Assembly (NCBI RefSeq): GCF_004010195.1
Contig: NC_057720.1
Location: forward strand, 90,351,801 to 90,415,800
Reading direction: 5' to 3'
DNA from: Chiloscyllium plagiosum
Lineage: Eukaryota
Length of the DNA: 64,000 nt
Under the pieces are notes generated by a model. The model was not told the DNA's origin. It did no database searches and was given only the letters and a program-made list of their open reading frames with translations. How positions within the stretch are numbered: position 1 is the first letter of the stretch; every line of letters begins with the position of its first letter. Shown in pieces: positions 9,901 to 64,000 of the stretch. A program made the translations under genes and the position numbers.

Positions 9901-10650
9901 ACTCCCTTGGTCCTGCGCCCCTGACACTGCTGCGATCACTCTGTACTGACCTTCTCACACTGCAGCATTCCCTCAGAGGTGAGCCTCTGACGCCAGAGCA
10001 TTACCTCAGCACTAACACTTTGTGCAGCACTCCCTTAGTACTAGCCCTCTGACCGTGCAGCACACCCTCAATACTGACCCTCTGACAGTGCCGCACTCCC
10101 TCAGCACTGACCATCTGCCAGTGCAACGCTCACTCAGTGCTGGCCCTCTGACAGTGCGGCGCTCCCGGAGTACTGACCCTCTCACAGTGCAGCACTTCCT
10201 TAGTGTATTGACCATCTAACAGTGCAGCTTCCCTCAGTACTGACTCTCTCACAGTGTAGCACTCTCTCAGTACTGACCCTCTGACATTGCAGCACTCCCT
10301 CAGTACTGACTCTCTCACAGTGTAGCACTCTCTCAGTACTGACCATCTCACAGTGCAGCGCTCCCTCAGTACTGACCCTCTGATAGGGCAGCACTCCCTC
10401 AGTAGTGACTCTCCGACAGAGCAGAAGTCCCTCGGTGCTGATCGTCTGACAGTGTGGCACTGTCTCGATCTTGTATCTCTGATAGTGCAGCAATGCCTCT
10501 GTATTGACCCTCTGACAGTGCAGTGTTGTCTCAGTACTGACCCTCTGATGGTGCATTTCTCTCTCAGTCCAGATCCTTTCATAATGTGGCATTCCCTCTG
10601 GACTGAACATCTGACAGTGCACTGCTCCGTCAGTACTGACCCTCTGACAG
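3939..10650. repeat. 33-bp tandem satellite, about 6.7 kb and about 200 monomers
   Basis: Consensus CTGACAGTGCAGCACTCCCTCAGTACTGACCCT; gives 11-aa periodic ORFs in several frames (EGVLHCQRVST / VQHSLSTDPLT). Confidence 0.97.
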
Positions 10651-23047: not shown

Positions 23048-23820
23048 AACGCCACACTCACAGGAATCCGATTCACAAGAGAAGAAGAAAAGGATAGCCA
23101 ACTCCCATTCCTAGACGTGATGGTACAGAGAACATCAAACGGAAAATTCACTACAAGGGTATTCAGGAAAGCCACACAAACAGACCAAGTCCTAAACTAT
23201 GAAAGTAATCACCCCAACACACACAAACGAAGCTGCATCAGGACACTATTCAGAAGGGCCACAACACATTGCAGTACACCAGAACTGCAAAAAGAAGAAG
23301 AGGAACACCTATACAAGGTATTCGCCAAAAACGGATACCCGCGCAACTTCATCAACAGATGCCTAAGAGAAAGACCACGGAACAAGGACATACCACAACC
23401 AAAAGGACTAGCCAAACTACCATCCATCAGGAGCATCTCAGAACTGACAGCCAGACTACTGCGACCCCTAGGACTCATAACAGCACACAAACCAACAGCC
23501 ACGCTCAGACAACAACTCACCAGAACGAAGGACCCAATACCCAACATGAGCAANNNNNNNNNNNNNNNNNNNNNNNNNNNNNNNNNNNNNNNNNNNNNNN
23601 NNNNNNNNNNNNNNNNNNNNNNNNNNNNNNNNNNNNNNNNNNNNNNNNNNNNNNNNNNTATAAACACCGGAGGAAACATCAAAGAAGCGCTTCGCAGGAG
23701 GCTCCCAAGCACTGAAGATGTCGCCTAGCCAGGGGACGAAACGTTTGCAACAAAAACTTCCAGCTCGGCGAAGAGAACCACAACAACGAGCACCCAAGCT
23801 ACAAATCTTCGAACAAACTT
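23048..23820 (+). mobile_element. Young 5'-truncated Penelope-like element (RT C-terminus, gap, 3' terminal repeat)
   Basis: Open frame IRFTREEEKDSQLPFLDVMV...VFRKATQTDQVLNYESNHP...LFRRA...KNGYP, the typical PLE RT thumb. The GIY-YIG part would fall in the N gap 23554-23658. Confidence 0.9.
23709..23748 (+). ncRNA. Minimal type I hammerhead ribozyme motif
   Basis: GCA-CUGAAGA-U-GUC(...)GAC-GAAAC-GUU-UGC: conserved core, helix II, 3-bp helix I and palindromic AACGUU in place of helix III. Confidence 0.75.
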
Positions 23821-40554: not shown

Positions 40555-42820
40555 GGTTTTTTTTAGTGCCTATTTTTCCCCAGCATCCATGTTGTGTGTG
40601 TTCAGGTGTGAGACACAGTGAAAGACACAAGGTGCATGAATCTTTATTCAATTTCCACCACCAGGAAGAAAAGAAACACCCGAGTGGCCAGTGACAAGCA
40701 CTGCCCTTCACATCGAAGGGCAATGCTGTGTGATCAAACAGTGAAGGGGAGAGCAGGGACTAAATCAAAATAGAGTTGGAGAGGGAAATAATGCACTCCA
40801 CTCCCTGTAGCACCCACCTCTCCCTGAACAACTCCAGGGTGTTGGTCGACACCGCGTGCTCCTTCTCCAAACACACCCGGGCTCTAACATAACCGCAGAA
40901 GGGGGCAGGCAGTCGGCCCGAATGACCCCCTCCACGGACCACTGCCTGGACCTGTTTATGGCCAGTTTGGCCAGGCCCAGGAGCAGAGCCACAAGGAGAT
41001 GTTCAGACCTGCCCTCCCTCCTCTGTACCGGGTGCCCGAAGATCAGGAGCGTGGGACTGAAGTGCAACCAAAAGCAGAGGAGGAGGTTTTTATGAAAATC
41101 AAACCCACACCCAATATACACATTGTCCACGGACTCTACAGCGCCACAGAACAAGCGGTTGGGCTGGGAGTCCGTGAACCACCGCAATCTGCTGTTGTCG
41201 GGGACCGCTGCGTGCAGCACCCTCCACAAGATCCCCGAGAGAAAGGGGGAGGAGCCCCCGGAGAGAGCCCTCTACTGGGGATCCCCACCGCCCGGTGGCA
41301 AATGGGCACGCCAAGGCCCGCCTTTTAACATCCTTAAATTAAAATTCCAGAGGTAGCTCAGATTGTGGGGCACAGGCTGCCGCGGGAAGTACGGGGCCTT
41401 GGGGCCAATGTGAGATTCCGTCCGGGCTGGGGTGAGCGCGGACGGGATCCCACTGCACACCTGAGCATCCTTCAACTGGTGCACTACGTCGGGTCGGAGC
41501 AATGCCGTTTTAAGGCATCGGATGGCGGAGGCCACGTACCAGACATTGGCCGCTGCCCTGCTCGCTATGTCCTGCGGCAGCGTCCAGCCCAGGCCCCCAG
41601 CACCCAGCATGTCCCCGACCCTGGTCACCCTCACTGCCATGGCCCTCCCCTCCGACAGCCACTCGAACCCACGAGTACGGAGATGCGGATTCCTGAGCAA
41701 CGGCTCCCTGAAGACAGCTGCTACTCCTGCCAGAGGATAGGCGCAACGTGATTCGACCATGTTTCAGACAGTGATCACGTCCGGGTAAAAGACAGGCAGC
41801 GTCTTGACGGCGACCTCCACGATGAACAGGAGCTGCATGTCGTAGTTGAGGTTACGCACCTGGCGGAAAAGTTACGTTGCCAGAGCACACCACCTCGGAG
41901 GAGGCTCGACATAAAGTTATCGCTGCAAGGTCTGAAGGCGGAATGTCACGCCCACCAGCGACTGACCATCCTACTCAATAGGGAGACTCCAAACCTGCAC
42001 AGCGACCCAGTGTATCTTTTTGTCCCAGAAGAAGTCGACCAACGTTCTCTGGATGTCAGCGACAAAGTCAGGAGGAGGGACCAAAGTGACCAGCCGCTAC
42101 CACAGCATTGCGGCCACCAGCTGGTTTATGACCAGCACTCGACTCCTGTAAGATAGCACTCGGAGCAGTCCTGTCCAGTGGTCTAGGAGAGCCGAGACTT
42201 TGACCTCCAGCTCCTGTGTTGGCCAGCCAGGATTCCTCAGCCAGGCTGAGGTAGACCCCCAGGTAGAGGAATTGGGTGGTACTCCAGCTGAACCCCTGGA
42301 ACTCCTCCAGCAGAGAGTCCACCCGCCACGGACAGACCAGTATTCCGGAGCATTTGGCCCAGTTGATCCTGGCAGTCGCGCCTGGCCTGGCAGTCGCACA
42401 TCCTCCTCAGGTCAGCCGGGTCGGTGAAAATGGGGAGCACGTTGTAGGCCGAGAGGACCACCCCCGTGCCTGCGCCACGCAGAACCAGCCTCAACAACCT
42501 CCTCCGCAAGAGGCGCAGGAATAGCTCCACGCACAGGGAATACAGCTGGCTGGACAGGGGGCAGCCTTGACGCACTCGCCTCCTGAAGCGAAGGGGCGCC
42601 GTCAGGGACCCGTTAACTTTAACCAGACACTCTGTGGCGGTGTACAAAAGTCGGATCCGGGCGACGAACTGCGTCCTGAACCCGAATGCCCGCAGAGTCC
42701 CGAGCAGGTACTCGTGATTGACCCTGTGGAATGCCTTCTCCTGGTCGAGAGATAGGAAGGCGCTCGGCAGACCAGCCTGTCGACAGAAATGGATCAGGTC
42801 CTGGTGGATGTTGTCATTTA
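40555..42820 (-). mobile_element. Tx1-like L1-clade LINE, RT to 3' end, frameshifted
   Basis: CLVKVNGSLTAPLRF...VRQGCPLS, YLGV, GRVLVINQL-like, WRVLHAAV (zinc-knuckle region), ELFRERW; T-run marks the poly(A) end. Confidence 0.85.
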
Positions 42821-43644
42821 TAAAGCTCTAGATGGGCTGAATACCTTCAGTACAGGTGTAGTTGGGAATGGTGCAGAACGTTTTGGAACCATCAGTGAAC
42901 AGTCCACTTGTGACTTTATGATGGAGGGAAGGCCATTGATGCTGCAGCTACTGGTAGCCCACAGTGCCTCATGGATGGCCAGCTTCCATGTGCTCCGTCC
43001 TTCAGAAGTATGTCCTACTTCAGAGGAGGGAGAGCCACATAACACAATGGGCAGGGTCTTCAATAAGAGGCTGAGAGTTCCCCTCTACCAGGACTGTGTG
43101 CTGGCTGCTCCCACAGATATTGTCAGGGACAGATCCATCTGGGACAAGGGGTTTGGTGAGAATGTTTCCTTCTTGTTGGTTCCCCCATCACTTCTTCCAG
43201 TCTGGCTGCTGTGTATGTGAGGTCTCTCCCTGGTCAGTCAGGGGTGGGCCAGTGGGAACACTCTTGGTAATGGACATTGGAATCCCACACCCAGGGGTCA
43301 GTCTGTGTCCTTATCTCCCTCAGTACTTCCTCTGATTTGTTTTCAACATCGAGGGGAACTGAGTTATCACAGAGGAGCAGGTGAGGGGCAGGAGATATCC
43401 ATCCTCAGGCGATTTCCTTGACCATCCGTGGCCTGTTACCATAAGTCTTCCCAGGTTCTGGAATCAATGTTGGTGAATTACAGGGTAAATCCTTCCCTGA
43501 CTGTATCCCACACAGTCCCCACCGCTGGTGGGTCTGTCCTGCCGGTGGAACAGGATGTACCCAGGGATGGTGATGGGGCTTCATGAAACATGATCCATCA
43601 GGCCTGATCCCGTGAGTATGATGGTGTCAGACTGTTTCCTGATT

Positions 43645-43891: not shown

Positions 43892-44391
43892 NNNNNNNNN
43901 NNNNNNNNNNNNNNNNNNNNNNNNNNNNNNNNNNNNNNNNNNNNNNNNNNNNNNNNNNNNNNNNNNNNNNNNNNNNNNNNNNNNNNNNNNNNNNNNNNNN
44001 NNNNNNNNNNNNNNNNNNNNNNNNNNNNNNNNNNNNNNNNNNNNNNNNNNNNNNNNNNNNNNNNNNNNNNNNNNNNNNNNNNNNNNNNNNNNNNNNNNNN
44101 NNNNNNNNNNNNNNNNNNNNNNNNNNNNNNNNNNNNNNNNNNNNNNNNNNNNNNNNNNNNNNNNNNNNNNNNNNNNNNNNNNNNNNNNNNNNNNNNNNNN
44201 NNNNNNNNNNNNNNNNNNNNNNNNNNNNNNNNNNNNNNNNNNNNNNNNNNNNNNNNNNNNNNNNNNNNNNNNNNNNNNNNNNNNNNNNNNNNNNNNNNNN
44301 NNNNNNNNNNNNNNNNNNNNNNNNNNNNNNNNNNNNNNNNNNNNNNNNNNNNNNNNNNNNNNNNNNNNNNNNNNNNNNNNNNNNNNNNNNN
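43892..44391. other. 500-N scaffolding gap
   Basis: Exactly 500 N. Confidence 0.99.
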
Positions 44392-47901: not shown

Positions 47902-49494
47902 TTAGTTTTTTGATTCTGTCTTTACAAAAGAAACGAACTTTGTAGTGAATGAAACCTTTGAAGAGCAGGTGTGCATGCTGGAATGGATAGAGATAGAGGA
48001 AGCTGATGGGCTGAAAATTTTGTCAAACATTAAGATTGACAAGTCGCCAGGCCCGGATAAGATTTGTCCTCGGCTGCTTTGGGAAACGAGAAATGCAATT
48101 GCTTCGCCGCTTGTGAAGAACTTTGCATCCTCGCTCTCCACTGGAGTTGTACCTGAGGACTGGAGAGAGGCAAATGTAATTCCTCTCTTCAAGAAAGGAA
48201 ATAGTGAAATCCCGGCAATTACAGACTAGTAAGTCCCACATCAGTCATCTGCAAGGTGTTAGAAAGGATTCTGAGGGATAGGATTTATGACCATCTGGAA
48301 GAGCATGGCTTGATTAAATGCAGTCAACACGCCTTTGTGAGGTGCAGGTCATGCCTCACAAACCTTATCGAGTTCTTTGAGGATGTGACAAGAAAAGTTG
48401 ATGAGGGTCGAGCTGTGGATGTGGTGTATATGGCATTTATTAAGGTTCCCCATGGTAGGCTCATTCAGAAGGTCAGGAGGAATGGGATACAGGGGAACTT
48501 AGCTGTATGGATACCGAATTGGCTGGCCAACAGAAGACAGCGAGTGGTAGTAGAAGGAAAATATTCTGCCTGGAAGTGGTGAGTGGTGTTCCACAGTGGT
48601 GTCCTTGGGCCTCTACTGTTTGTAATTTTTGTAATGACTTGGATGAGGGTATTGAAGGATGGGTCAGCAAGTTTGCAGACAACAAAAATTGTTGGAGGTG
48701 TCGTTGACAGCTGTTGTAGGCTGCAGCGGGACATTGACAGGTTGCAGAGATCGGCTGAGAGGTGGCAGTTGGAGTTCAACCTGGATAAATGCGAGATGAT
48801 TCATTTTGGAAGGTCGAATTTGAAAGCTGAGTACAGGATTAAGGATAGGATTCTTGGCAGTGTGGAGGAACAGAGGGATCTTGGTGTGCAAGTACATAGA
48901 TCCCTTAAAATGGCCACCCGAGTGGACAGTGTTGTTAAGAAAGCATACGGTGTTTTGTCTTTCATTAACAGGGGGATTGAGTTTAAGAGTCATGAGATCT
49001 TGTTGCAGCTCTATAAAACATTGGTTAGACCACACTTGGAATACTGTGTCCAGTTCTGTTCGCCCTATTACAGTAAAAATGTGGATGCTTTGGAGAGGGT
49101 TCAGAGGCGATTTACAAGGATGTGCCTGGACTGGAGGGTTTATCTTATGAAGAGAAGTTGACTGAGCCTGGACGTTTTTCTTTAGAGAAAAGGAGGAGGA
49201 GGAGAGGGGACCTAATTGAGATATACAAGATAATGAGAGGCATAGATAGAGTCGATAGCCAGAGACGGAGGAAAGTATAGAGGGGATGTCAGAGGAGGGT
49301 TCTTTACACAGAGAGTTGTGAGAGCATGGAATGCGTTGCCAGCAGCAGTTGTGGAAGCAAGGTCACTGGGGATATTTAAGAGACTACTGGACATGCATAT
49401 GTCACAGAATGTGAGGGTGCATACATGAGGATCAGTGGTTGGCACAACATCGTGGGCTGAAGGGCCTGTTCTGTGCTGTATTGTTCTATGTTCT
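47902..49494 (+). mobile_element. CR1-type LINE (HER1-like), RT and 3' end
   Basis: KSPGPD, WREANVIPLFKKG, SCLTNLIEFFEDVT, KFAD, RPHLEYCVQF; ends in (ttctatg)n. Confidence 0.93.
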
Positions 49495-49969
49495 ATCACT
49501 ATGGCTCTTCCTTGAGGCCAAAAAAAATTGACACTTTGATCAATGATTTCTAAAATTTGCTCGCATATCTGTTGTGAAGGACATTTTCAAATAACTTGAA
49601 GTGCAAATGGTTGACATCAATCGGAATACAGTAACATTTCATGTCTTACCCCACACAAAAAAATCAAGCAAGTTTGTTGTCACGAGTTGCTCTAAGCAAG
49701 TCTATGATGGACTGTTTTATCAAACAAAATCATTTCCAGTGTTGTGAGGGCTCGTCTATCTTCTGTGCAATGGTCTGAATTATGTGATTGACTGCAGATG
49801 AAACTGGCTGCTCTGGATAAAAGTACAGTTTGTGCCTTTCACATTGTTAATGTATATTGCTGACTTTAATTGAATAAAGTGATGTTGTCCCAGGCATTGT
49901 CTGGCACCATTAACTAGACCATTAATTTCCACATCACTAGCCGGAGTGTCAGGTGGAGTTTATTGATAT
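49494..49969 (+). repeat. Left arm of ~480-bp inverted duplication (partner 52314-52799)
   Basis: ccattaatttccacatcactagccggagtgtcaggtggagtttatt is the exact reverse complement of part of the right arm, and similarity continues across the arm. Confidence 0.9.
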
Positions 49970-50277
49970 CATTGAAACGAAGGCTTGGAATATTTCCAGT
50001 ATGAATCATGTGAATTAGAGCCTCAGAACGAGACAAAGTAGGAAAGATGAATTTAGAGTAGTAGAAAGTTTTCACGACAGAGAGAGATCACTTCAGCCAT
50101 CGCACCTGTATCACGTGAAAACAGAGCCTTCCAGCCAACATCCACTTCATAGCATGTTGTCCATAATCCTGGAGGTGATAGCACTTGAAGTAAACATTCG
50201 GGAACATTGTGTAGGGTATAATCTATTATTAACATAGATATGATCTCCAATGCTGTAAATCCTGGATTTTGGGGGAA

Positions 50278-51535
50278 ATGTCAGCACAGTTTTGTGAAGG
50301 GTAGGTCGTGCCTAACGAATCCTGTTGACTTTTTTGACAAAGTGACCAAACAGGTAGATGAGAGTAAACCGGTTGATGTGGTGTATATGGATTTCAGCAA
50401 GGCGTTCAATAAGTTTCCCCACAGTAGGCTATTATACAAAATGCTGAGGAATGGGATTGTGGGAACCATAGCAGTTTGAATCAGTAATTGGCTTGCTGAC
50501 AGAAAACAGAGGGTTGTAGTTGATGGAACATGTTTATCTTGGTATCCAGTTACTAGCGATGTACCGCAAGGGTCGGTATTGGGTCCACTGTTGTTCGTCA
50601 TTTTTATAAATGACCTGGATGAGGGATGAGAAGGGTGGGTTAGTAAATTTGCGGACAACACTAAGTTCAGTGGAGTTGTGGATAGTGATGTAGGTTGTAG
50701 TAGGTTGCAGAGAGACATAGATAGGATGCAGAGCTGGGCTGAGAGGCGGCAAATGGAGTTTAATGTGGAGGTGATACACTTTGGACGGAGTAATTGGAAT
50801 GCAAAATACTGGGCGAATGGTAAGATTCTTGGGAGTGCAGATGAGCAGCGAGATCTCGGTATCCATGTACACAGATCCCTGAAAGTTGCCACCCAGATTG
50901 ACAGGGTTGTTAAGAAGGCAATAAGTGTTTTGGCCTTTATTAATAGAGGGATTGAGTTCCGGAACCAGGAGGTTATGCTGCAGCTGTACAAAGCTCTGGT
51001 ATGGCCACACTTGGAGTATTGTGTACAGTTCTGGTCACTGCATTATAAGAAGGATGTGGAAGCTTTGGAAAGGGTGCAGAGGAGATTTACTAGGATGTTG
51101 CCTGGTATGGAAGGAATATCTTACGAGGAAAGGCTGAGGGCCTTGAGGCTGTTCTCGTTAGAGAGAAGAAGGTTCAGAGGTGACTTAATAGAGATATATA
51201 AGATAATCAGAGGGTTAGATAGGGTGGACAGGGAGAGCCTTTTTCCAAGCATGGGAACGGCAAACACGAGGGGACACGACTTTAAAGTGAGGGGAGATAG
51301 GTATAAGACAGATGTCAAAGGTAGTTTCTTTGCTCAGAGAGTACTAAGGATGTGGAATGCTTTGCCTGCAACGGCAGTGGATTCGCCAAGTTTAAGTGCA
51401 TTTAAGTCGTCATTGGACAGGCAAATGGACGTACATGGAATATTGTAGGTGGGATGGGCTTCAGATTAGTATGACAGGGCGGCGCAATATCGAGGGCTGA
51501 AGGGCCTGTACTGTGCTGTAATGTTCTATGTTCTA
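50278..51535 (+). mobile_element. CR1-type LINE (HER1-like), 5'-truncated
   Basis: QHSFVKGRSCLTN, DFSKAF, KFADN and a 256-aa open C-terminal stretch; ends in (ttctatg)n. Confidence 0.93.
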
Positions 51536-52799: not shown

Positions 52800-54162
52800 T
52801 TTGTAAATGTTTGGAGCTGGGATTGTTTTCAATTTTTGACTAAGACATTGGCGTATTTCCCCTATGGTGGGGGATTTCAATAATAGGGAACATGTTTTTA
52901 CAGTGAGAAGAGAAAAAAGTTTTTAAAATTGTACCAGTGACAACCTTTTACACAGAGAATGGTTTGTGTGTGGGATGATTTAAGGTGGATACTTCCAACC
53001 TTTAGAAGACATTTGGATAAGTGAATGAATATCAAATGTTTGGAAGGATATGGGCCAAGTACACACAGGTTGGATTAGTTTAGTTTGGGATAATGACTGA
53101 CATGGACTGGTTGGACCGAAGTGTCTGTTTCCATGCTGTATCACTCCATGACTCTATGACTATTTATCATTTTTTCTCAATATTAAACAGTGCTGTCGTG
53201 ATGCTCGAATGAACTGTTGATGTTTAGGTTGTGTTTGAGACTCTGCGAATATTTCCTTCAATGAGAGGAGGGACTAGTTCTCCAAGTTGCCCAACTAAAA
53301 AAATAAACTTTTCTCCAGCAATGTTGCTGAGTAGAGTTGTTTCTGCTGAGGCAGTGGTTATGGTTTGCAGTTGGCTTTCCACCAACTGGTCAACAGTGAG
53401 ACGAAATATCTTTAATCCACTGTAGAAACTCCACCTCCTTCCAGTAAATGAAACTGGGTGCTCAAGGACCTTTTCTGCAGTCAGCTTAATTGCTGCCAAC
53501 TATTGTATCTGGCCGATTAAAGGGAAAATGAATCGACTAAAGTAAAATCCTACCACACAAGCTATATTTTCCCATTTACTCACAATGGACACATTTCACT
53601 TGGCATTTCTTCGTTAAAAAGGAAAGTCACTGAATACAGCATTCACTGTATGACTATCAGAAAACAGGACATTGAATGCAATGACATTCTGGTTAGTTCA
53701 GCCTGTTTATTGAGTATCTTTAAAGCTCCTGAATATGAAGTTAATGGATCCAAAATCCCATATTGCAGGAACATTTGTTATCATCTCAAAGTAAATTAAC
53801 AAACTTGAATTGGTTCAAACTCGCATCACTTGTTGCACTATTCTCTGATTCATGCATCTCGTTAAAACTGAGTGGCCCTTTATACATGATTAATACTAGT
53901 GTAGAGAAACCGCAAATTTTTGCTGATTTTTATGATTTACCTGCCCCTGTCAGAGCTATCAGTGAGCAGAGAAATGTACTGTTTATGACCTACATTCGTG
54001 GTAATGATTATTGTAATACTCTTTAATTTAACCAAACACTCCTGATGTACCCAGACAGTTACCTGCAATGGTTTAGATGTTGATGATTAAAAAAAAACGT
54101 ATGGACTGTTCTGTTCTAGTTCATTAGATGCTCTTTCAAAAGTTTACCTAGGTGTTATGTAT

Positions 54163-54393
54163 GGAAATGTGTTGCTGGAAAAGCACAGCAGGTCAGGCAG
54201 CATCCAGGGAACAGGAGAATCGACGTTTCGGGCATGAGCCCTTCTTCAGGAATGAGGCCCTCATTCCTGAAGAAGGGCTTATGCCCGAAACGTCGATTCT
54301 CCTGTTCCCTGAATGCTGCCTGACCTGCTGCGCTTTTCCAGCAACACATTTCCAGCTCTGATCTCCAGCAATCTGCAACACCTCACTTTCTCC
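54163..54393. mobile_element. Young 231-bp fold-back Penelope-derived element with perfect 16-bp TSD
   Basis: cctaggtgttatgtat at 54147-54162 and 54394-54409; about 95-bp near-perfect inverted arms plus a ~40-bp unpaired tail. Confidence 0.92.
54267..54294 (+). ncRNA. Minimal hammerhead ribozyme core (mirror copy on minus strand 54222-54249)
   Basis: CUGAAGA-A-GGGC-UUAU-GCCC-GAAAC-GUC; helix I is weak (2 bp, then a mismatch). Confidence 0.65.
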
Positions 54394-54733
54394 CCTAGGT
54401 GTTATGTATCACTGCCAACTCACTTTTTGTTTCTCAGGCACACACTTTTCCTTTACTATGCATTTTGAAAAAAAAAAGATGCAAGGAGAGACATTCTGCA
54501 ATGTAAGGAGATGCTTCTAATGTCCGGATCGAAACTGCTTAGGGACATACACTCACATTCTGAACATAATCACTTTAGACATGCTCCATATTATGCTGCC
54601 TAAATTGAATTTAGAAACACAGATTAGAAAAATGGTATATTATTTTGTAATGTGAGAGAGACTTTGAGTGACAGCAAAAATAAAGTCACTAATTTTGTTG
54701 GCTAATAATATTATTGAAGTTCTTTTTAGCTTT

Positions 54734-55488
54734 ATTTATTTATTTTTTAACCCCCGCACTACCACCTAAGTGCAGTAGTGCTTATTTTTTTCCCCAGCAA
54801 CCATGGTGTGTGTGTGCAGGTGTGAGACACAGTGAATGACACAAAGTGCACGAATCTGTATTCAATTTCCACCACCAGGAAGATAGGAAAACACCCGGGT
54901 GGCCAGTGACAAACACTGCCCTTCACATCAAAGGACAGTGCTGTGTGATCAAAACAGTGAAGGGGAGGGTAAGGACTAAATCAAAATAGAGTTGGAGGGA
55001 GAAATGATGCACTCCACTCCCTGCGGCGCCCACCTCTCCCTGAACAACTCCAGGGTGTTGGTCGACACCGCGTGCTCCTTCTCCAAGGACTCTTTTTAGC
55101 TTTTTTTTTCAAAGGGCAGTGACACTCCTGTTTTTTTTTCTTTTAACCCCCACACTACCACCTAAGTGCGGTAGTGCTTATTTTTTCCCCCAGCACCCAT
55201 GGTGTGTGTGTGTGCAGGTGTGAGACACAGTGAAAGACACAAAGTACACAAATCTTTATTCAAATTCCACCACCAGGAAGATAGGAAAACACCCGGGTGG
55301 CCAGTGACAAACACTGCCCTTCACATCGAAGGGCAGTGCTGTGTGATCAAAACAGTGAAGGGGAGGGTAGGGACTAAATCAAAATAGAGTTGGAGGGAGA
55401 AATGATGCACTCCACTCCCTGCGGCACCCACCTCTCCCTGAACAACTCCAGGGTGTTGGTCGACACCGCGTGCTCCTTCTCCAAGGAC
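54734..55488 (-). mobile_element. Two tandem 3'-end copies of the Tx1-like LINE
   Basis: Each matches 40565-40870; both end at ...ctccaagga; tctttttagcttt at 54721, 55091 and 55489. Confidence 0.9.
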
Positions 55489-56036
55489 TCTTTTTAGCTT
55501 TATTCTGCTTGTGTTTGAAAGTAGGATTAAAGGGAGTTAACTTCTAATTGAATATTCTAAATATAATCACTTTGGACGCGCTCTGTATTCTGTTGCTTAA
55601 ATTGAATTTTGAAATGTTTAGTAAAAATTACATGTAATTTTGTAGTGCGACAGAGACTGGCAGTGTCCACGGAAAAAAAGCTCAATTGTTTTATTAGCTA
55701 GTAATATGTTTGAATTTTGATTTTAGTTTTATCTGCTTGTGAATGAATGTAGAATAAAGGGAGTTAACTTCCAACTGATTTTGTTTTGTTTTGTTTGAAG
55801 AAAATACTTGCAACTATCATCAGAAACAGACCTGAAACTACTCAAATTTACTTCCAAAGAAGGTATTCAGCAAAACAAATATCCCAAGATGTGTATATAT
55901 CCATGTTTAAACATAACCTCATGTAAATATACGAGCCCATGTGTTCGGGCTGTACAAGCTGATACCAGGATCCAGTCTCAGCCTCCAGCAGGACACCAAC
56001 AGGCGGAAGCTGTAAGTCTGCCCCTTCCGATGACCA

Positions 56037-56043
56037 TATAAAT
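56037..56043 (+). promoter_or_regulatory. Candidate TATA box of the VH promoter
   Basis: TATAAAT about 90 bp before the leader ATG; ETS-like GCGGAAG near 56003; no ATGCAAAT octamer nearby, consistent with shark IgH promoters. Confidence 0.55.
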
Positions 56044-56129
56044 CCTGGGCACTAGACCATATATCAACACTCCTGGGTCGGTTTTGTTTAGAAAGATGTT
56101 GACAGAAACATTTCCCACAAGTTATCAGA

Positions 56130-56178
56130 ATGATTGTGTCGACAATTTTTCTCAGTTTGTTACTGACTTTCTTATCAT
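56130..56178 (+). CDS. IGHV: Ig heavy chain leader exon
   Basis: MIVSTIFLSLLLTFLS + 1 nt, then GTGAGT donor at 56179; intron ends in ttttctttttaaAG at 56306. Confidence 0.93.
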
Positions 56179-56306
56179 GTGAGTGTTTTTTGTTCAAGTC
56201 TCTCTTTGTTACTGTCTCAATGTTAGTCTACCCACAGGAATGTAAAAGACACAGCCATCATTTCATCAGCATTATTGCTCAAGGTTTATTTGTTTTCTTT
56301 TTAAAG

Positions 56307-56611
56307 GTGTCCACTCGGAGGTTGCTTTGTTTCAGCCAGAGGCAGAGACTGGCCATCGCGGAGGCAGCCTGAGACTGACCTGTAAAACCAACGGGTTCGA
56401 TCTTAACAGCAGCTACATGCACTGTGTCCGACAGGTTCCGGGAAAGGGCCTGGAGTGGTTGCTTTGGTACAATAGTCCATACAGCAATAACTATGCACCA
56501 ATGATTAGGGGTCGATTTACTGCGTTCAAAGACACTTCAGCCAAAATTTTCTTGTTGAACATGGTGGACCTGAGGATCGAAGACACTGCCATCTATTACT
56601 GTGCAAGAGAC
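56307..56611 (+). CDS. IGHV: IgM-type VH exon; open frame but probably non-functional
   Basis: (C)[32 protein letters not shown]...[15 protein letters not shown]...RFTAFKDTS...[11 protein letters not shown]. Both canonical Cys present; the FR2 Trp is replaced by Cys. Confidence 0.95.
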
Positions 56612-56649
56612 CATAGCGAGACGAACCAGGCTGGACCCGTTCAAAAACA
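56612..56649 (+). other. V-segment RSS (22-bp spacer) with mutated heptamer
   Basis: CATAGCG (56612-56618), 22 nt, TCAAAAACA (56641-56649); consensus is CACAGTG / ACAAAAACC. Confidence 0.85.
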
Positions 56650-57012
56650 GCTCGAGGGAACATTTTAGCAATTCCATCGTAAATTGGTGGTAAGCACGTG
56701 TTTTAAATACAATTATACCAACTGCGATCTCAAGCAGACCTCAGGCTGCCTCTTACAAAGCTATCAAAGAGGAAATGTGCAATTTAAACGAGCAAACTAG
56801 GTGATACAATGGGACAATGTTTTGGGCATGTCATATGTACTGCTAACACTTCCATCAATTAAATGCTTGGACAAAATGTTAGTTTTAATACATCTGACAG
56901 CTCAGGAAATCACTGCTAATTGTGTTATGTAAACTATGTCATTAATTCTAATCATGATCAGTACTAAATGGCTATCTCAAATGAAAATTGAGACCTAGAG
57001 TATAGAACAGAG

Positions 57013-57040
57013 AATGAGTGTACTGGTCTATATCATTGTG
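57013..57040 (-). other. Candidate 12-spacer RSS 5' of the D/J block
   Basis: Heptamer CATTGTG (57034-57040; consensus CACTGTG); 12 nt upstream is AATGAGTGT, a weak nonamer (4/9 match). Nothing nonamer-like at 22-23 nt. Confidence 0.6.
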
Positions 57041-57102
57041 ATACCAGTTGGAGTGATCTCTTTATTACTGGGGCCAAGGGAGCATGGTGACAGTGACTTC
57101 AC
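57041..57102 (+). pseudogene. IGHJ: JH segment with a fused D-like 5' extension
   Basis: YYWGQGSMVTVTS then GTAAG donor at 57103; 5' part ATACCAGTTGGAGTGATCT carries an in-frame TGA at 57054-57056. Confidence 0.88.
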
Positions 57103-57699
57103 GTAAGAACTTTGAACTTTCTTCGTGACTTTTTTAAAAACGCTCTATTCGTGTGAATAATTTGTGAATTAAATGAAACTCAGATTCTGTGCTGAGTTTG
57201 GGTTGGTTCGGATTGATGTTTGTTCAGACTGATTATAGACTTCAGTTAAGATTCAGCAAATAGTTAATATGGTGATGATGGAGTTAGTTGCTCGGTGTAT
57301 CTCTTTTTTATGGATCAGATGCGCATTCTGTGCGCCTGGGTAAAAACAATGACTGCAGATGCTGGAAACCAGATTCTGGATCAATAGTGCTGGAAGAGCA
57401 TAGCAGAAGGGTTACTTGAAACACCTAATGTCTCTTAATCAGTCAGCTATAAATATTGTTTAATGTCAGTGACAACCTGACTGTGAGTTTTATTATCAAC
57501 AACAAATGCTAAGAATTTAAAGATGTTCGAAATATTACCAAACGTGATTAAAATATGCTAAAATATCATTATTCATTTCTTGAATATATTCCCCGTATAC
57601 ATAATGTTATTACCATTATTATATTTTCTCATTTATTTTGTTAATGTTGTTGATGACAAGCAGGTTAGAAACTGTCATAAAATTTTCTTTCGGTGCTAT

Positions 57700-58010
57700 A
57701 TTTCATTCTGTTGATTAGATTCTGAGTTTGTTTTACTTGATTCTGTTGAATTGAGTTGATTGGAGTTTGGCTTTGTTTTAGTTGATTTGGTTTGAACTGA
57801 GTTGATTGGATTCTGACTTTGTTTTTACTTGGTTTTGTTGAATTGCGTTGATTGGATTTTGAAATTGTTTTATTTGATTCTGTTGAATTGAATTGGTTGA
57901 ATTCTGATTATCTTTCATTTAAATCTGTTCTTTTGAGTTAATTGGATTCTGATTTATATTTTATGATTCTGTTGAATTGTGTTGATTGGATTCTTATTCA
58001 GTTTGTGGAA
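57700..58010. repeat. 45-bp T/G-rich tandem repeat (about 6-7 units) in the J-C intron
   Basis: Unit gattctgagtttgttttacttgattctgttgaattgagttgattg. Confidence 0.85.
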
Positions 58011-59598
58011 TTGATCTGCCTTTTCATGCTTTCTGTAATTGGTGTTTTCTTTCTGGTGAGGAGATTGACTCTCTGGATTACATTTCATTACCAATATTTG
58101 TGAAGTTCTTTGTTTTTCATGAATCATTTCTGCATTTGTTAAACTCATATGACATATTTATCTCTGCTTGATTGAATACATTACATCCGTTTGTAACTGT
58201 CTGAAAACCAACTTAAGGCAGAAACCCGGAAGTGTGAAAAATGAAAAAGAAACAAGTTTTTAATGCATTGACTTTTTTAAAAAAATCTGAGGTCTAATTG
58301 TGAGCTAACTCCATTTTTTGTTTTGAGTAGCCTCATTCAAAATAAAATTTGGGACTAAAATCTGAAACTGCAGAATTGATCAGATCACGTAATTGAAACT
58401 AACTTAAAATTATAATTTGGTAATATTTGTCCATTCAAGTAATTTTGTTTTGACCTTGAAGTGATTAATCAATATATGCCTTCAATTGCTCTCCTGTGCA
58501 CTGCACAAGATTGTCATGATCAGGAAGGGTGTACAAGTTGGAAATAAATTGAACTGTTGCCGGAAGCGTTACAGCTTTAAGTGTTAAATCCCCTCACAAA
58601 CAAGGCTGCTTTCATGACTTGTTATTTCTGTTCAATTTAATCATTAGTTTGCTTGATTCTAAGCAGTTTTGTTGGATTTCAATTTGGGTTTTTTTTTCAG
58701 AGGTTACATCATGTTCTTGGTTCTGTTGAACATGTTTGCAGAGCTAATTCTGCTGCAAACACACCGTGTTGTGATTTGGTGATCTTTGATCTGTTGTGAG
58801 GGTAACATTAAATGTGTGATGTTTTGGAAACATTTTCTGCTTTCTACATTGTTTTTGCAATGTTAACATGGTGACAGTGAACTGCTCCAGGTTCTTCGTT
58901 CAATGCAATCAGCATGCCAGTTGAAATTTCATAAAGCCTAATATTAAGTGAAAGGCAAATCGCAAAGTTTTTGGAAATGAAGGGAAAACAGATACCTTCG
59001 GGCGCCATTTTTATTTAGAAGTAATAATTAAGGATTAATCTAATCCATGCTTTACAATCCAAATTCAGAACTCAACTATCTAGTTCATTCACAAGGTCTG
59101 TCTTTAAACAGATTACAAATCATAGAGAAATCTAAATAGAATTTCAAAAGTATAATGTTCTAATAGTTTTTGCTCTTGAGCAAAATGCCATGACTGTGTT
59201 ATAATTGATCAAGAAACACCTTTCAATTCCGTTGTACACTACATACAATTTTTCTGACTGGAAAAGATCATTGGTGAAGACCATTTGGAAGTTCTGCTCA
59301 ATTCTATGAAGAACAGATCAGTTTCATTGCTTTGATCAGTTTTACAAGTAACTTGAGTTAATTCATTGTTATGTCCCTGATTAAACTGGATTTGCAGGAT
59401 AAAAATAAAACATTAACTGAATTATTTAATCTGCACAGTGCTTTAGGTGTTCCCAATCCGTGCGTTTTAAATAAATAGTTACATTTTACAACAAAATATC
59501 AGCTGAAGAGTCATTCTTATGGAATCAACTGCTGTAGTGAATTATGTGACCAAGGCCAAATTTTGAATTAATTAAAATAATCCACTCATGAACTCGCA

Positions 59599-59938
59599 GG
59601 GCAGCATGGTGGCTTAGTGGTTGGCACTGCTGCCTCACAGCGTCAGGGTCCCAAATTCAATTCCACCCTTGGGTGACTGCCTGTGTGGAGTTTGCACATT
59701 CTCCCTGTGTCTGCGTGGGTTTCCTTCGGGCGCTCTGGTTTCCTACCACAGTCCAAAAGATGTGCAGGTCAGGTGATTGTGCTAAATTGCACATAGTGTT
59801 CAGTGATGTAAGGGTTAGGGTGCACTAGTCAGGGGCAAATATACGTTGGGGGAATGGGTCTGGGTGGGCTACTTACTGTTCAGAGGGTCATCGTTGAATT
59901 GTTGAGCCGAATGGCCTGTTTCCATACTGTCGGAACTC
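59599..59938 (+). mobile_element. Full-length tRNA-derived SINE (HE1-like)
   Basis: A box TGGCTTAGTGG (59610-59620), degenerate B box near 59653-59664, CR1-like tail ggcctgtttccatactgt. Confidence 0.88.
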
Positions 59939-60177
59939 TACTCTTAAAACCATGGGAGTACTTGCTGCAAACGCAGAGAATTCATTTTACCTCCATGTGT
60001 GCAGATGTATGCAGAGTTTACAAATTTGCAGAAGACATGCACTAGAGGATAACAGAGCACGTTGTTTATTCAAACACTAAAAATAGGGTAATATTTATTT
60101 TAATTAATATACTTGACTGATTTGTTGCAATGTAGCGATCGGAAGGAATCTGCTCACGTTAGTTAAGTGTGACAATT

Positions 60178-60492
60178 ATTTAGATTAGATTTCCTGCGGT
60201 ATGTATCGGGCCATTTGGCCCAACACGTCCACACCGATCTGCTGAAGAGTAACCCACCCAGATCCATTCCCCTACCCTATATTTACCCCTGACTAATGCA
60301 CATATCTTTATGGACAATATAACATGACCACTTCACCTGACCTGCACATCTTTGGATTGTGGGAGGAAATCCACACAGACACAGGTGAGAATGTGTGAAA
60401 TCCACACATCCAGTCGCCCGAGGCTGGAACCGAGCCCAGGTACCTGGCGCTGTGACGCAGCTGTGCTCTCCACTCAGCCACTGCGCTGCCCA
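60178..60492 (-). mobile_element. Full-length tRNA-derived SINE (HE1-like), reverse orientation
   Basis: Minus strand starts gggcagcgcagtggctgagtgg and ends in (ctaat) units. Confidence 0.88.
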
Positions 60493-63400
60493 CATTTACT
60501 GAGACATCCGTTAAACCGAGCAACTCCAGACAGAAGCATGTTTTCAATTCATACCATCCTTAAACATTTTCATACATTAAAAGCAGCAAACAAGAAAATG
60601 AACTTGCCCTAATTTTTTCAACAGAAATGCATTTCCGCACTCGAATGCAGTATTGGCTTTATGCAGTGCATGCAAAATCTCCACAGTTCAAGGAATGTTG
60701 TAAGAATATGTAAAAAAAAATAGCGAATAATCCATTTCCTCTGGGGCTGTGCTTTAATTGGCGATATGTCCCACCTCAATAATTTTGTTAAATACAATGA
60801 CTTATTAAGTTTATTAACTCAGTGGTTATTTATGTTCATTGTGAACACATTCTCGTTCACATTAATCCTCTGGTTAGTTCCTCTGATGAATGTTCAATTA
60901 CATAATATATTTGACGTGAGGAGTTAAGGAATGTATCTGCTAGGATTAAGTCTGTTGTACAGTTTGTTTCAGAGCTATCTCCGACTAACTTGTCAACGGT
61001 CCTGACCATTTGTAAACTGTCCAGTTCGGATACCTGAATCTCAGACAGTTTAATTTCATCTCGCGCTTCAAAACCACTTTTATCAGCCAGAAATGCAATA
61101 TTCGATTAGGTGCCTTAGAATTGAGAGTCCTGACGAAGTTGTACCAATCAGAACGAACGTTTCAGGAACAACAGGCAGATAACAAGAGTTTTGAAATTGG
61201 TTGTTGGCAACAAGAGATATTTGATTGAGCGAGGCGGAGGGAAATATGCTGCATATTTTCTTTATTCCTCAGTTGTGCAGGACATGTTTAGTGACACAAT
61301 GTAGAATCAGATATTATTTTGCATCTTATTATTTGAAAACCTATCATCAGCTTTTAATGTCACTGGCGATGGTCATAATATACTTCAATACATTTTAATC
61401 TATTTCAGACTAAGTAGACGATCTGGTGCAGCAACATTCACAGGGGAAAGAGGAAGGGAGTTCTAGGTTGAAATCCAGTGACAGTGAATTGATGGCAATG
61501 CAATTCCCAGTTTTATTCCTCTGTAGTTCCCATAGAGTTTGAACAAATCTGAGCTGTTGTCAAAGTATTCTTGAATCAATGTTGAAATGTTACTTACATT
61601 GTACAAAGATTCTGGAACAATCCCTGGTTGTTCGAAGGTGTTAATAACTAACATGGTTTATGCACTGTCAAACAGGTGGGCTTTGTTCTCCGTGATAGTG
61701 TCGAGCTCATTGTGTTCATGTCTGTTGTGATGTTGTAGTAGTGTCCCTGATCCTGAGCCAGGTGGCCTGTGTTCTCTTACAACCTGTGAGGGAGGTATGT
61801 AACACCATCTCTTATCAGGTTACTTCAGTGCAAGAAAGCAGATGTTTAGGTGTTTGTTGGAATTCCACTCAGAGGCCAATGAAATCTTTTCAGTTGCTGT
61901 CCTGACTTGTGTCTCTTAGATATTAAACAGAATTTTGGCGGTTAGCAGCTTTTTCCAGATCAGTATTTGTTCCCAATTTTTTGGGCATTGCTCGCTGGGG
62001 TTAGTGGAGTAAGTGCTCAAATAAATCCCAGCTTTTGACTTACTGTTCTAACAATATCATTTATAACTAATCTAGAATGAATCATTCTCGAAGCATATTT
62101 GATGAGATTATGCTTAGGCTGTTTTACTTTATGTAAACCAGTGCTGTAGCTGAATTTGATGTTCAGTACGATGGGGATTCCGCTGAATACAACACTTGCT
62201 AGCAGATGGTGATAGCTTTTCAACTGGTCTTCAATTGCTATCTCCGACCATCCAGTACCTCTGCTAAGAATCCTTGTTCCAACAGGAGTCAAGCAAACGT
62301 AATCACTGTTTATCTCAACGGGTGTGAGTTCTTGTGCCAAAAACATGAAAACAATTTGCTGACGAGGGGGGGTCTCTGGATGCGAAAGGTTAACCTTGCT
62401 TTCTCTCCACAGGAGCTGCCAGACCTGCAGAGTTTCTTCAGAAATTTCTGTCTTTATTTTGGTTTTCTAGCATTTAAAGTTTGTTGGTTCATTGAAAAAT
62501 GTTCTGTTCGATGAAACACGTTCTTCAGAGAAAAGATGCATTTGAACAAATTGCAAATGTTCAGAGATATTACATATCAGAGAATCATTGAATTTGAGCG
62601 CCCTGATCTCAAGCTGTAGTTTCACAAGAAACTATTATGAAGTAACAACACACTCCAGAGTGCAGTGGCTGCTGTAATTGGGTGGAAGTTATTTTGATCA
62701 CTCAAATATGGAATGTCAATGATCCTGTTCCAAATAATCAACAGAAGTTTTTTTTTAAAAGCATGTGTGAAACAATTAACTTTTTGAAATATTTTAACAA
62801 AAAGTGTTCACCACCATTGCTAGCTTAATGAATGACACAATGATAGGAAGGTGGGAGCAGAGGAGGGCACTCAGCCACTCGAGCTGTTCCACCAATTACT
62901 TAGATCATGGTGCATCTGTGAGCTAAATCCACAGGTCTCCCTTTGGCTAAAACTCTTAAATACCTTTGATTAACAAGCAAAAACTATCCCGGATTTACTG
63001 ATTCGACTGCCCATAACAAAGGGAGGCACCCTTTCTGAAATACATTTCTGTGGGTATTTAAAGGTACAAAATGAGACTGGAATTAATTGCTCATGAAAGT
63101 AAGCTTTAAATCTCTGACAATTTCCAATTGAAACATCCCAATAATCATATTCCATTAATTTAACACTATACTCCCCTGGAATAAAGAAATATAATGTGTG
63201 ATTGCCTTGCTAAAAATGAGGGAAGCTTCATTCCTATTATATGATTAAGAAATAGCTCTGTTCATTCAGTGAAGACACAGACAAATCACACAAAAGGAAA
63301 CCATGTCATCTTGTGGAGACACACAAGTGCCTCAAATAATTTTTAATTCTTCTAGTGGTTGTTTGAATCTCTAGACAAGTGTGGAAGTGTCAGACCTTTT

Positions 63401-64000
63401 ATATCGCCTTGAGAAGCCAGTCGTCATCAGCATATTTGAATTGCTGAAGTTTGTGTGGTATTAGCACATTCACAGCGCTGTTAGGAAGTGAGTCCCATGG
63501 CTGTGATTGAGGAACAGGAAACAGGCAGGGAAATAGTTAGAGTCAAGTTGAAGTCTGATTTGGAGGAAAGCTTTCAGGAGAAGCATTGACATGCATGTGC
63601 GCCCTTATCCTCAAGGATCACAGTTTTGGAACATACTGCCGAAGGGACATGTCAGCATGCAAAATGGAAGCTGAACAGGGCACCTCGGCCCCTCTGGAAT
63701 GCTATCCCATTCATGGGATCATCATTAATCTTGCTGCTCGTCGGTCATCCCAACACATTGATAACATTGAACCTGATTGTTTACTCTTCAACAAAAGAAT
63801 GGTGAACCTTTGGAATTCTCCGCCGCAGAAATTGATTGAGGTCAAAACATTAAATGATTTCAATAAGGAGATGAATTCCTTCAATCCTTAAAAAATGCTA
63901 CGGATATGTGGGAGAAAGGCAAACAGGCTACAATATTGGTTGAAATCCATGAAAACATTGAATGGGACATGGTTTGTAAGTTTGCACGTAACGCCAAAAT

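What the first reader, a model, noticed from the sequence alone, without database searches (positions are those of the whole stretch)
56612..57107. IgH cluster appears germline-joined as V-[D(D)J]
Established: shark IgM clusters are normally V-D1-D2-J with three RSS-flanked gaps of a few hundred bp, and some clusters are pre-joined in the germline by RAG. Seen: only one ~360-bp gap follows V; then a heptamer with a 12-spacer-type signal leads directly into ATACCAGTTGGAGTGATCT and the JH, with no RSS in between and no J-type 22/23 RSS. Inference: D1(-D2)-J were joined in a germ cell, leaving V unjoined. The join has TGA in the J frame, but restoring one G (TTT GAT TAC) gives an open TSWSDLFDYWGQG, so an in-frame join may have decayed later. 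The joined forms I recall mostly include V, so a V-last form would bear on rearrangement order.
Basis: partly seen in the sequence, partly recalled or inferred. Interest (0 to 1): 0.8.

Follow-up and report, generated by a model that had tools for sequence, protein, structure and literature searches.

The report
Shark antibody gene part-joined, V last
A shark antibody heavy-chain gene cluster in which the D and J pieces are already fused in the assembled genome while the V piece is still separate, a part-joined layout that the reviews read here do not list, though this copy is a dead gene.

Summary
On the + strand there is a leader and a VH exon (56130-56611). A V signal follows, with heptamer CATAGCG, a 22-nt spacer and nonamer TCAAAAACA. 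After one 363-bp intersegment stretch comes heptamer CATTGTG (57034-57040), abutting about 18 D-like bases fused to a JH that ends at a GTAAG donor (57103). No recombination signal lies between D and J.

Contigs of related clusters in public runs match the gap up to 57044 and match J from 57059. In between they carry at least 382 and at least 115 other letters. So the missing DNA ends at signal borders, as a RAG join would leave it.

The best reading is a germline V-DDJ cluster that is now a pseudogene. The V heptamer reads CAT where relatives have CAC, Trp41 is Cys, TGA lies in the J frame, and the D-side nonamer matches only 4 of 9.

Three things are not shown. No run carries this locus's own D-J junction, so germline status rests on the assembly. 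D1, D2 and N letters could not be assigned. The "lost G" idea has no support.

Reviews read in passages list VD-J, VDD-J, VD1-D2J and VDJ. V-DDJ appears there only as a somatic intermediate. Unchecked first-stage notes report V-DDJ clusters elsewhere in this genome.

The parts
55921..56042 (+). Promoter-like motifs: octamer-like ATGTAAAT at 55921 and TATAAA at 56037
   Evidence: Pattern scan. Motif matches only; function not tested.
56130..56178 (+). Leader exon (MIVSTIFLSLLLTFLS + first base of Cys codon)
   Evidence: same leader as P0002. table 5 shows a spliced contig joining 56178 to 56307.
56179..56306 (+). Leader intron, 128 nt, GT..AG
   Evidence: table 5 (X2, skips 128, ends GT..AG).
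56307..56611 (+). VH exon, open, but with Cys for the invariant Trp (MHCVRQ) and five further changes at positions invariant in four shark relatives
56612..56649 (+). V recombination signal: heptamer CATAGCG, 22-nt spacer, nonamer TCAAAAACA. Related clusters have C at 56614 and one more G after 56628.
   Evidence: tables 3 and 4. The window's own letters are kept by contigs of depth 8.75 (X1) and 6.05 (X2).
56650..57012 (+). Single intersegment stretch (V-D1 type), 363 bp. Related contigs match it at 90-95 %.
   Evidence: table 8 (X5 record 30, X12 record 14, X2 record 22) and the depth bins of table 2.
56690..56695 (+). GTAAGC, likely cryptic splice donor used by this locus's own V transcript
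   Evidence: X2 record 21 (1 difference in 181) leaves the window right of 56689 with 122 unlike letters. Strand convention checked with X12 record 16. Splicing is inferred.
57013..57040 (+). D-type 5' signal: nonamer-like AATGAGTGT (4 of 9), 12-nt spacer, heptamer CATTGTG (6 of 7)
   Evidence: A related contig matches through it to 57044 (X2 record 22).
57041..57058 (+). D-derived and junction letters ATACCAGTTGGAGTGATC. TGA at 57054-57056 is in the J frame.
   Evidence: Bounds come from where related contigs stop (57044) and resume (57059).
57059..57102 (+). JH coding part (..LYYWGQGSMVTVTS). The start is a lower bound. The last base is C where all laid contigs have G.
   Evidence: tables 3 and 8. 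V-to-J joints of related transcripts enter at 57067.
57103..57108 (+). J splice donor GTAAGA
57310..57408 (+). Stretch in the J-C intron holding a very abundant repeat. Related clusters have 26-27 other letters here.
   Evidence: tables 2, 5 and 5c (X2 and X12 skip 57309 to 57409).
57710..57994 (+). 45-bp tandem repeat, 6.3 copies, in the J-C intron

Best explanation
This is a shark IgM-type heavy-chain minilocus fixed in the V-DDJ state.

How it arose (inferred):
- An ancestral V-D1-D2-J cluster lost the D1-D2 and D2-J intersegment DNA, together with four recombination signals, by RAG-type coding joins in the germ line.
- V, its 22/23-type signal, the V-D1 intersegment DNA and the 5' signal of D1 stayed in place.
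- Whether D2 contributed any letters is open.

What it could do: on paper, one further V-to-DJ join would complete the gene.

What it is now: a relic.
- The V heptamer reads CAT where relatives have CAC. By the established rule that the first three heptamer bases are needed for RAG cutting, that should block cutting.
- The D-side nonamer has decayed.
- TGA sits in the J frame.
- The invariant Trp of framework 2 is Cys.

Shown: the anatomy, the defects, and the fact that related clusters hold other DNA exactly between the D1 start and the J start.

Inferred: RAG as the agent, the germ line as the place, the ancestral four-segment state, and low-level transcription of V with splicing from a cryptic donor at 56690.
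For: - Anatomy and measurements.
- V identity.
- J is unique in the window.
- Borders (table 8):
  - X2 record 22 matches 56802-57044 and is then unlike for 382 letters.
  - X12 record 14 matches 56797-57021 and is then unlike for 123 letters.
  - X2 record 23 is unlike for 115 letters and then matches 57059-57309.
  - No joint from about 57044 is listed in table 5, so the run-on DNA is not the window's J region.
- Spacing: the 422-bp V-to-heptamer distance fits the roughly 400 bp between segments in nurse shark, and the 2R V-DDJ product described there (PMC2435157, passages read).
- Age: this locus carries private changes on both sides of the junction.
  - 56614 T, 56622 C and a missing G after 56628 are confirmed in X1 and X2 contigs.
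  - 57102 is C against G in all laid contigs.
  - Six V residues differ at positions where the four shark relatives all agree (the invariant Trp and five more).
  - These argue for an old germline locus, not a fresh somatic product.
- Leads only: unchecked first-stage notes report other V-DDJ clusters on other pieces of this genome.
Against: - No contig in the four runs laid carries the window's own J letter at 57102. All read G: X1 461.4 of 461.4, X2 11.1 of 11.1, X5 670.2 of 670.2, X12 306 of 306. No listed piece bridges 57041-57059. The junction therefore rests on one assembly.
- The runs behave like RNA (spliced leader, V-J joints), so none tests germline DNA.
- Only 32 of 16,401 laid pieces are listed, so bridging pieces could be hidden.
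- The nonamer at 12-bp spacing matches 4 of 9, and such heptamers occur 1.6 per kb.
- D1, D2, N and P letters could not be assigned, so the hallmark of a RAG coding joint (trimming, P letters) is untested.
- No C exon is seen in the 6.9 kb after J. Only the 5 longest open pieces were tested with Pfam; the rest were checked by eye.
Confidence: 0.65

Rival explanations
1. An ordinary deletion (replication slippage or end joining unrelated to RAG) removed D1's 3' part through the J signal in a cluster that was already a pseudogene.
For: The cluster carries many disabling changes. No N/P or trimming pattern could be scored. The D-side nonamer is unrecognisable.
Against: Both ends fall within a few bases of signal/coding borders. 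Related contigs stop at heptamer + 4 and resume at the J start. The 5' heptamer is left intact and abutting. For a random deletion in about 800 bp this is unlikely.
Confidence: 0.12
2. The junction is not germline. Either a somatic V-DDJ intermediate from lymphocyte DNA was taken into the assembly, or reads of different clusters were joined wrongly.
For: V-DDJ is a real somatic intermediate in shark thymocytes and B cells (PMC2435157). The window is a scaffold with two N runs. IgM clusters are multi-copy. No independent run shows the junction.
Against: Each somatic junction is rare in bulk DNA, so an assembler should not prefer it. The J side has a private letter at 57102 not seen in any expressed relative in four runs. 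The locus's private V-signal letters are confirmed in two runs. Neither fits a copy of an active cluster.
Confidence: 0.1
3. The layout is native: a cluster type that always had V, one gap and a long J-like segment with a 12-type signal, and never had free D segments.
For: V(23)-(12)J is a legal pair and is the lambda-type layout (general knowledge).
Against: Related clusters share the gap and the J but hold hundreds of other letters between them. The letters after the heptamer begin like the relatives' D1 (ATAC).
Confidence: 0.03

Closest known systems
Germline-joined and part-joined IgM clusters of horned shark and little skate (VD-J, VDD-J, VD1-D2J, VDJ)
   Same: Both are miniloci in which intersegment DNA and signals are missing in the germ line, ascribed to RAG acting in germ cells. 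Many are not expressed. Sources: passages of PMC2193153, PMC2193156, PMC5192425, PMC3308330 and PMC4279169.
   Different: All forms listed in those passages have V joined to D. Here V is the one segment left free and D-D-J is fused. The original description (Kokubu 1988, PMC454840) was not held, so its full catalogue was not seen.
Somatic V-DDJ ('2R') intermediates of nurse shark IgM genes
   Same: Same configuration: V and the V-D1 intersegment DNA are kept and D1, D2 and J are fused. It is prominent in Group 5 genes (PMC2435157).
   Different: Those arise in thymocytes and B cells and are absent from erythrocyte DNA. Here the state is in the genome assembly and carries old private mutations.
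Mouse and human DJH intermediate
   Same: A D-J fusion with a 5' 12-type signal waiting for a V with a 23-type signal (general knowledge; Figure 1 legend of PMC2435157).
   Different: That one is somatic, transient, and part of a translocon locus. It is not a heritable minilocus.
IgNAR type with germline-fused D segments
   Different: It is a different isotype, and J stays free there.

Membership tests
Cartilaginous-fish IgM-type heavy-chain minilocus | Leader plus VH exon of the shark VH family | tested here: met
   Pfam V-set E 4.1e-12. 59-73 % identity to four shark VH-like proteins, depending on the call. Leader nearly identical to P0002.
Cartilaginous-fish IgM-type heavy-chain minilocus | V followed by a 23-type signal | tested here: met
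   Heptamer, 22-nt spacer and nonamer at 56612-56649. The heptamer is defective (CAT).
Cartilaginous-fish IgM-type heavy-chain minilocus | Two free D segments, each flanked by signals | tested here: not met
   No D with two signals lies between 56650 and 57102. This is the point of the finding.
Cartilaginous-fish IgM-type heavy-chain minilocus | JH with WGQG..VTVTS and a splice donor | tested here: met
   Related V-J transcripts enter at 57067.
Cartilaginous-fish IgM-type heavy-chain minilocus | C-mu exons downstream | tested here: inconclusive
   None is seen from 57107 to 64000 (by eye; 5 open pieces, no Ig domain). In nurse shark the first C-mu exon lies 6.3-6.8 kb after J (PMC2435157), and this intron holds repeat insertions. 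The exon may lie beyond the window. The isotype is therefore not shown.
Germline-joined Ig clusters (RAG joins in germ cells) | Intersegment DNA is missing relative to unjoined relatives, with ends at signal/coding borders | tested here: met
   related contigs stop at 57044 or 57021 and resume at 57059, with 382, 123 and 115 other letters.
Germline-joined Ig clusters (RAG joins in germ cells) | Junctions show trimming and N or P letters when compared with germline D and J ends | not testable with these tools
Supplementary junction figures of PMC2435157 are closed.
Germline-joined Ig clusters (RAG joins in germ cells) | The junction is present in non-lymphoid or germ-cell DNA and in several animals | tested here: inconclusive
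   The four runs laid behave as RNA and none shows this locus's J. The one read-laying run is used.
Germline-joined Ig clusters (RAG joins in germ cells) | The remaining signals form a legal 12/23 pair | tested here: inconclusive
   V side: 22-nt spacer. D side: good heptamer, but the nonamer at 12 bp matches only 4 of 9.

The most novel reading that the evidence does not exclude
V-DDJ clusters form a small heritable class in this shark, and each is frozen because its V signal was already dead when RAG acted in a germ cell. The recombinase then made every legal join on the open minilocus and stopped only at the broken heptamer. Germ-line joining would then follow the same 'any order, run to completion' logic as in shark lymphocytes, and the class would record germ-cell RAG activity independent of V.
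Probability: 0.2. Interest if true: 0.6.

Novelty: new variant of a known kind. Interest (0 to 1): 0.45.

Why it matters
Part-joined antibody genes in sharks are the main natural evidence that RAG has acted in germ cells and reshaped antigen-receptor loci.

The forms named in the reviews read here all include a V-D join. Lee et al. 2000 (PMC2193156) used the V-D and V-D-D germline forms to argue that germ-cell joining differs from the lymphocyte programme.

A heritable V-last form would show that D-to-J-first joins also reach the germ line. That would match the lack of a fixed order in shark lymphocytes (PMC2435157).

This copy is a pseudogene, so it matters as a historical record and not as a working receptor. 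If the other V-DDJ clusters noted in this genome hold up, comparing their junctions could tell one old event followed by duplication from repeated germ-line events.

Tried and rejected
- Fetching unjoined clusters. The other collections hold no shark genomes. D1, D2, N and P letters were therefore not assigned.
- Reading D letters from elsewhere. I looked at the tails of P0001 and P0004 and at the 16 and 26 letters between V and J in two related transcripts (table 5c). They share short runs with the window's junction but give no firm germline D. Dropped.
- GATC at 57055-57058 could be a 2-letter palindromic addition at the J end. A 4-letter palindrome is expected by chance about 1 time in 16, and the J end is not known. 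It is a lead only.
- A second signal-like site at 56911-56917 lacks the three coding-side bases and is one of about 25 equally weak hits in 3.5 kb. Rejected.
- The 'lost G' in J is not supported (table 4).
- Search for C exons: 5 of the 28 open + strand pieces of 45 aa or more after 57000 were tested with Pfam and none had an Ig domain. The rest were read by eye only.
- Rfam on 53000-64000: no family.
- Earlier findings searched by sequence: blank.
- Claim 'V-DDJ germline form not in print'. It rests on searches, and on passages of PMC5192425, PMC2435157, PMC2193156, PMC2193153, PMC3308330, PMC4279169, PMC8355894 and PMC12227049. No whole paper was read. Kokubu 1988 and Hsu 2016 were not held. 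Supplements are closed. Subscription papers are not covered.
- The order of 12- and 23-type signals around shark D1 and D2 is recalled from memory, not taken from a call.

Full report
WHAT IS THERE

The finding lies in a 64-kb window with a single VH gene (tblastn of the V against the window). All features are on the + strand.
- An octamer-like ATGTAAAT (55921) and a TATAAA (56037) precede an ATG at 56130.
- The leader exon ends at 56178. A 128-nt GT..AG intron follows, and the V exon runs 56307-56611.
- A contig in run X2 joins 56178 to 56307, so this splice is used in related genes (table 5).
- The V translation is a Pfam V-set domain, E 4.1e-12.
- Its best named relatives are four shark proteins: three from Chiloscyllium punctatum (73, 69 and 62 % identity) and one from Scyliorhinus torazame (67 %). 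The next hits are mammalian VH at 48 % or less.
- Earlier follow-up notes of this scan call the genome a bamboo shark. My protein hits fit that but do not prove the species.

THE TWO SIGNALS AND THE GAP

- After ..TACTGTGCAAGAGAC comes CATAGCG, a 22-nt spacer, and TCAAAAACA.
- 363 bp further on lie AATGAGTGT, a 12-nt spacer, and CATTGTG (57034-57040).
- The heptamer keeps the three bases next to the coding side. The nonamer matches only 4 of 9, and no other spacing does better.
- The heptamer abuts ATACCAGTTGGAGTGATC. That runs without any signal into a JH reading LYYWGQGSMVTVTS and then C|GTAAG.
- In the J frame the stretch reads YQLE*SLYYWGQG.., with TGA at 57054.
- The J core is unique in the window, and 0 matches are expected in shuffles.

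The one overstated point is the '12-spacer-type signal', which is a heptamer with a decayed nonamer.

IS D-J REALLY FUSED RELATIVE TO OTHER CLUSTERS?

The one read-laying run put contigs of four public runs on 55400-57650 at 90 % likeness: three runs of organism A from three studies, and one run of organism B.

The runs behave like RNA of lymphoid tissue. They show the spliced leader, and V-to-J joints 56608/56610 to 57067 with 16 and 26 letters between. They also hold unspliced contigs of related clusters:
- X2 record 22 (623 letters) matches 56802-57044 with 14 differences and 2 gaps, which is through the heptamer plus ATAC. It then runs on for 382 letters that fit nowhere in the stretch.
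- X12 record 14 matches 56797-57021 and runs on for 123 letters.
- X2 record 23 has 115 unfitting letters and then matches 57059-57309.
- No joint starting near 57044 is listed in table 5.

Related clusters therefore share the gap up to the start of D1 and share J from about 57059, but hold other DNA between. The deletion ends in the window coincide with signal/coding borders.

The 422 bp from the V end to the heptamer fit the roughly 400-bp segment spacing of nurse shark genes (PMC2435157, passage).

WHAT THE READS DO NOT SHOW

- At 57102 every contig of all four runs reads G where the window has C.
- No listed piece bridges 57041-57059.
- Only 32 of 16,401 laid pieces are printed.
- The D-J junction of this locus therefore has no support outside the assembly, and none of the runs tests non-lymphoid DNA.

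The V side of this locus, in contrast, is seen:
- X1 record 6 (56362-56652) and X2 records 20 and 21 (56309-56689) differ from the window by one letter each.
- They keep its private T at 56614, its C at 56622, and the missing G after 56628. Related contigs have C, G and an extra G at those places (tables 3 and 4).
- So the CAT heptamer and the 22-nt spacer are real in at least two samples, unless one of them is the assembly's own source.

STATE OF THE GENE: A PSEUDOGENE BY FOUR SIGNS

1. The V heptamer is CAT. Related contigs have CAC, and the read-through tail DHSE of P0002 implies CAC in that relative too. The first three heptamer bases are essential for RAG cutting (established knowledge).
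2. The invariant Trp of framework 2 is Cys, and five more residues differ where all four shark relatives agree.
3. TGA lies in the J frame.
4. The D-side nonamer has decayed.

The last J base is C where relatives have G. A very abundant repeat sits in the J-C intron at 57310-57408, where relatives have 26-27 other letters.

No C exon is seen before the window ends, 6.9 kb after J. In nurse shark that distance is 6.3-6.8 kb, so the exon may lie just outside the window. The isotype is inferred from the V family only.

THE 'LOST G'

But X2 record 23 covers 57059-57309 with a single gap, and that gap is at 57130 (table 4). I see no sign of a lost base. The stop may date from the join itself, as in many out-of-frame or stop-bearing somatic joins.

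MECHANISM

I think the most likely course is as follows.
- A V-D1-D2-J cluster underwent D1-to-D2 and D2-to-J coding joins by RAG in a germ-line cell.
- V stayed free, and the locus has drifted since.
- Whether the V heptamer broke before the joining (and so prevented the last join) or after it cannot be told here.

Rivals are a non-RAG deletion, a somatic intermediate or chimeric assembly, and a native D-less layout. Their weights are given in the Rival explanations section.

COMPARISON WITH WHAT IS KNOWN

- Passages of five reviews or commentaries list VD-J, VDD-J, VD1-D2J and VDJ as germline forms.
- V-DDJ appears only as a somatic two-step intermediate in nurse shark, prominent in Group 5 genes (PMC2435157).
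- Seven full-text searches found no paper describing a germline V-DDJ cluster.
- The library lacks most subscription papers. The original horned-shark paper and a 2016 review were not held. Supplements were closed.
- Within this scan, unchecked first-reader notes report V-DDJ clusters on other pieces of the same genome (s1-883605; s1-886154, 'behind a broken heptamer'; s1-885821). They also report V-D-DJ clusters (s1-885859, s1-885946). I could not test them. They are leads, and they suggest this copy is not unique.

VERDICT

The join relative to related clusters is supported. Germ-line origin is likely but not shown. Later decay of an in-frame join is not supported.
- This is a new variant of a known kind, in a dead gene. 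Interest is moderate.

Noticed in passing
window 56689-56695: A contig of run X2 that is this locus's own V (1 difference in 181 letters) leaves the window exactly before GTAAGC, 78 nt after the V end, and continues with 122 unfitting letters. This looks like a sterile V transcript spliced from a cryptic donor to an exon outside 55400-57650.
   Followed up: partly
window 56420-56426: The Trp-to-Cys change (TGG to TGT) creates a perfect CACTGTG heptamer inside framework 2 of the V exon.
   Followed up: no
window 53930-54010 and protein P0001: The predicted first exon of the closest bamboo-shark protein (P0001, MFADCYELTVPVRAISQQRNVLFMTDIR) resembles a + frame stretch about 2.3 kb upstream of this V (..FADFYDLPAPVRAISEQRNVLFMTYIR). 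No Pfam family matches it. The tail of P0001 after the V (..AVGSWIVTAIMIDTKTF) could be back-read as D letters plus a heptamer, 12-nt spacer and nonamer, i.e. a VDD-J gene. That is inferred from the protein only.
   Followed up: partly
window 3939-10650: A 33-bp minisatellite of 204.6 copies, 76 % matches, G+C about 55 %, open in several frames.
   Followed up: partly
window 54745-55501: A 398-bp unit repeated 1.9 times at 95 % identity just upstream of the V promoter. Its end at 55400-55488 belongs to a repeat with summed contig depth in the hundreds of thousands in all four runs.
   Followed up: partly
window 57710-57994: A 45-bp tandem repeat, 6.3 copies, in the J-C intron. Role unknown.
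   Followed up: no
window 57310-57408: A very abundant repeat fragment present here but replaced by 26-27 letters in related clusters of two organisms (tables 5 and 5c). Its letters resemble the element noted earlier at 54147-54409 (s1-883891). No Rfam family reached threshold in 53000-64000.
   Followed up: partly
window 42240-42827 (-) and 48208-48579 (+): Reverse-transcriptase fragments: Pfam RVT_1, E 3.7e-14 and 5.6e-08. Neighbouring open pieces at 48583-51445 had no Pfam match.
   Followed up: partly
window 23554-23658 and 43892-44391: Two N runs of 105 and 500 letters, so the window is a scaffold. They were left untouched.
   Followed up: no
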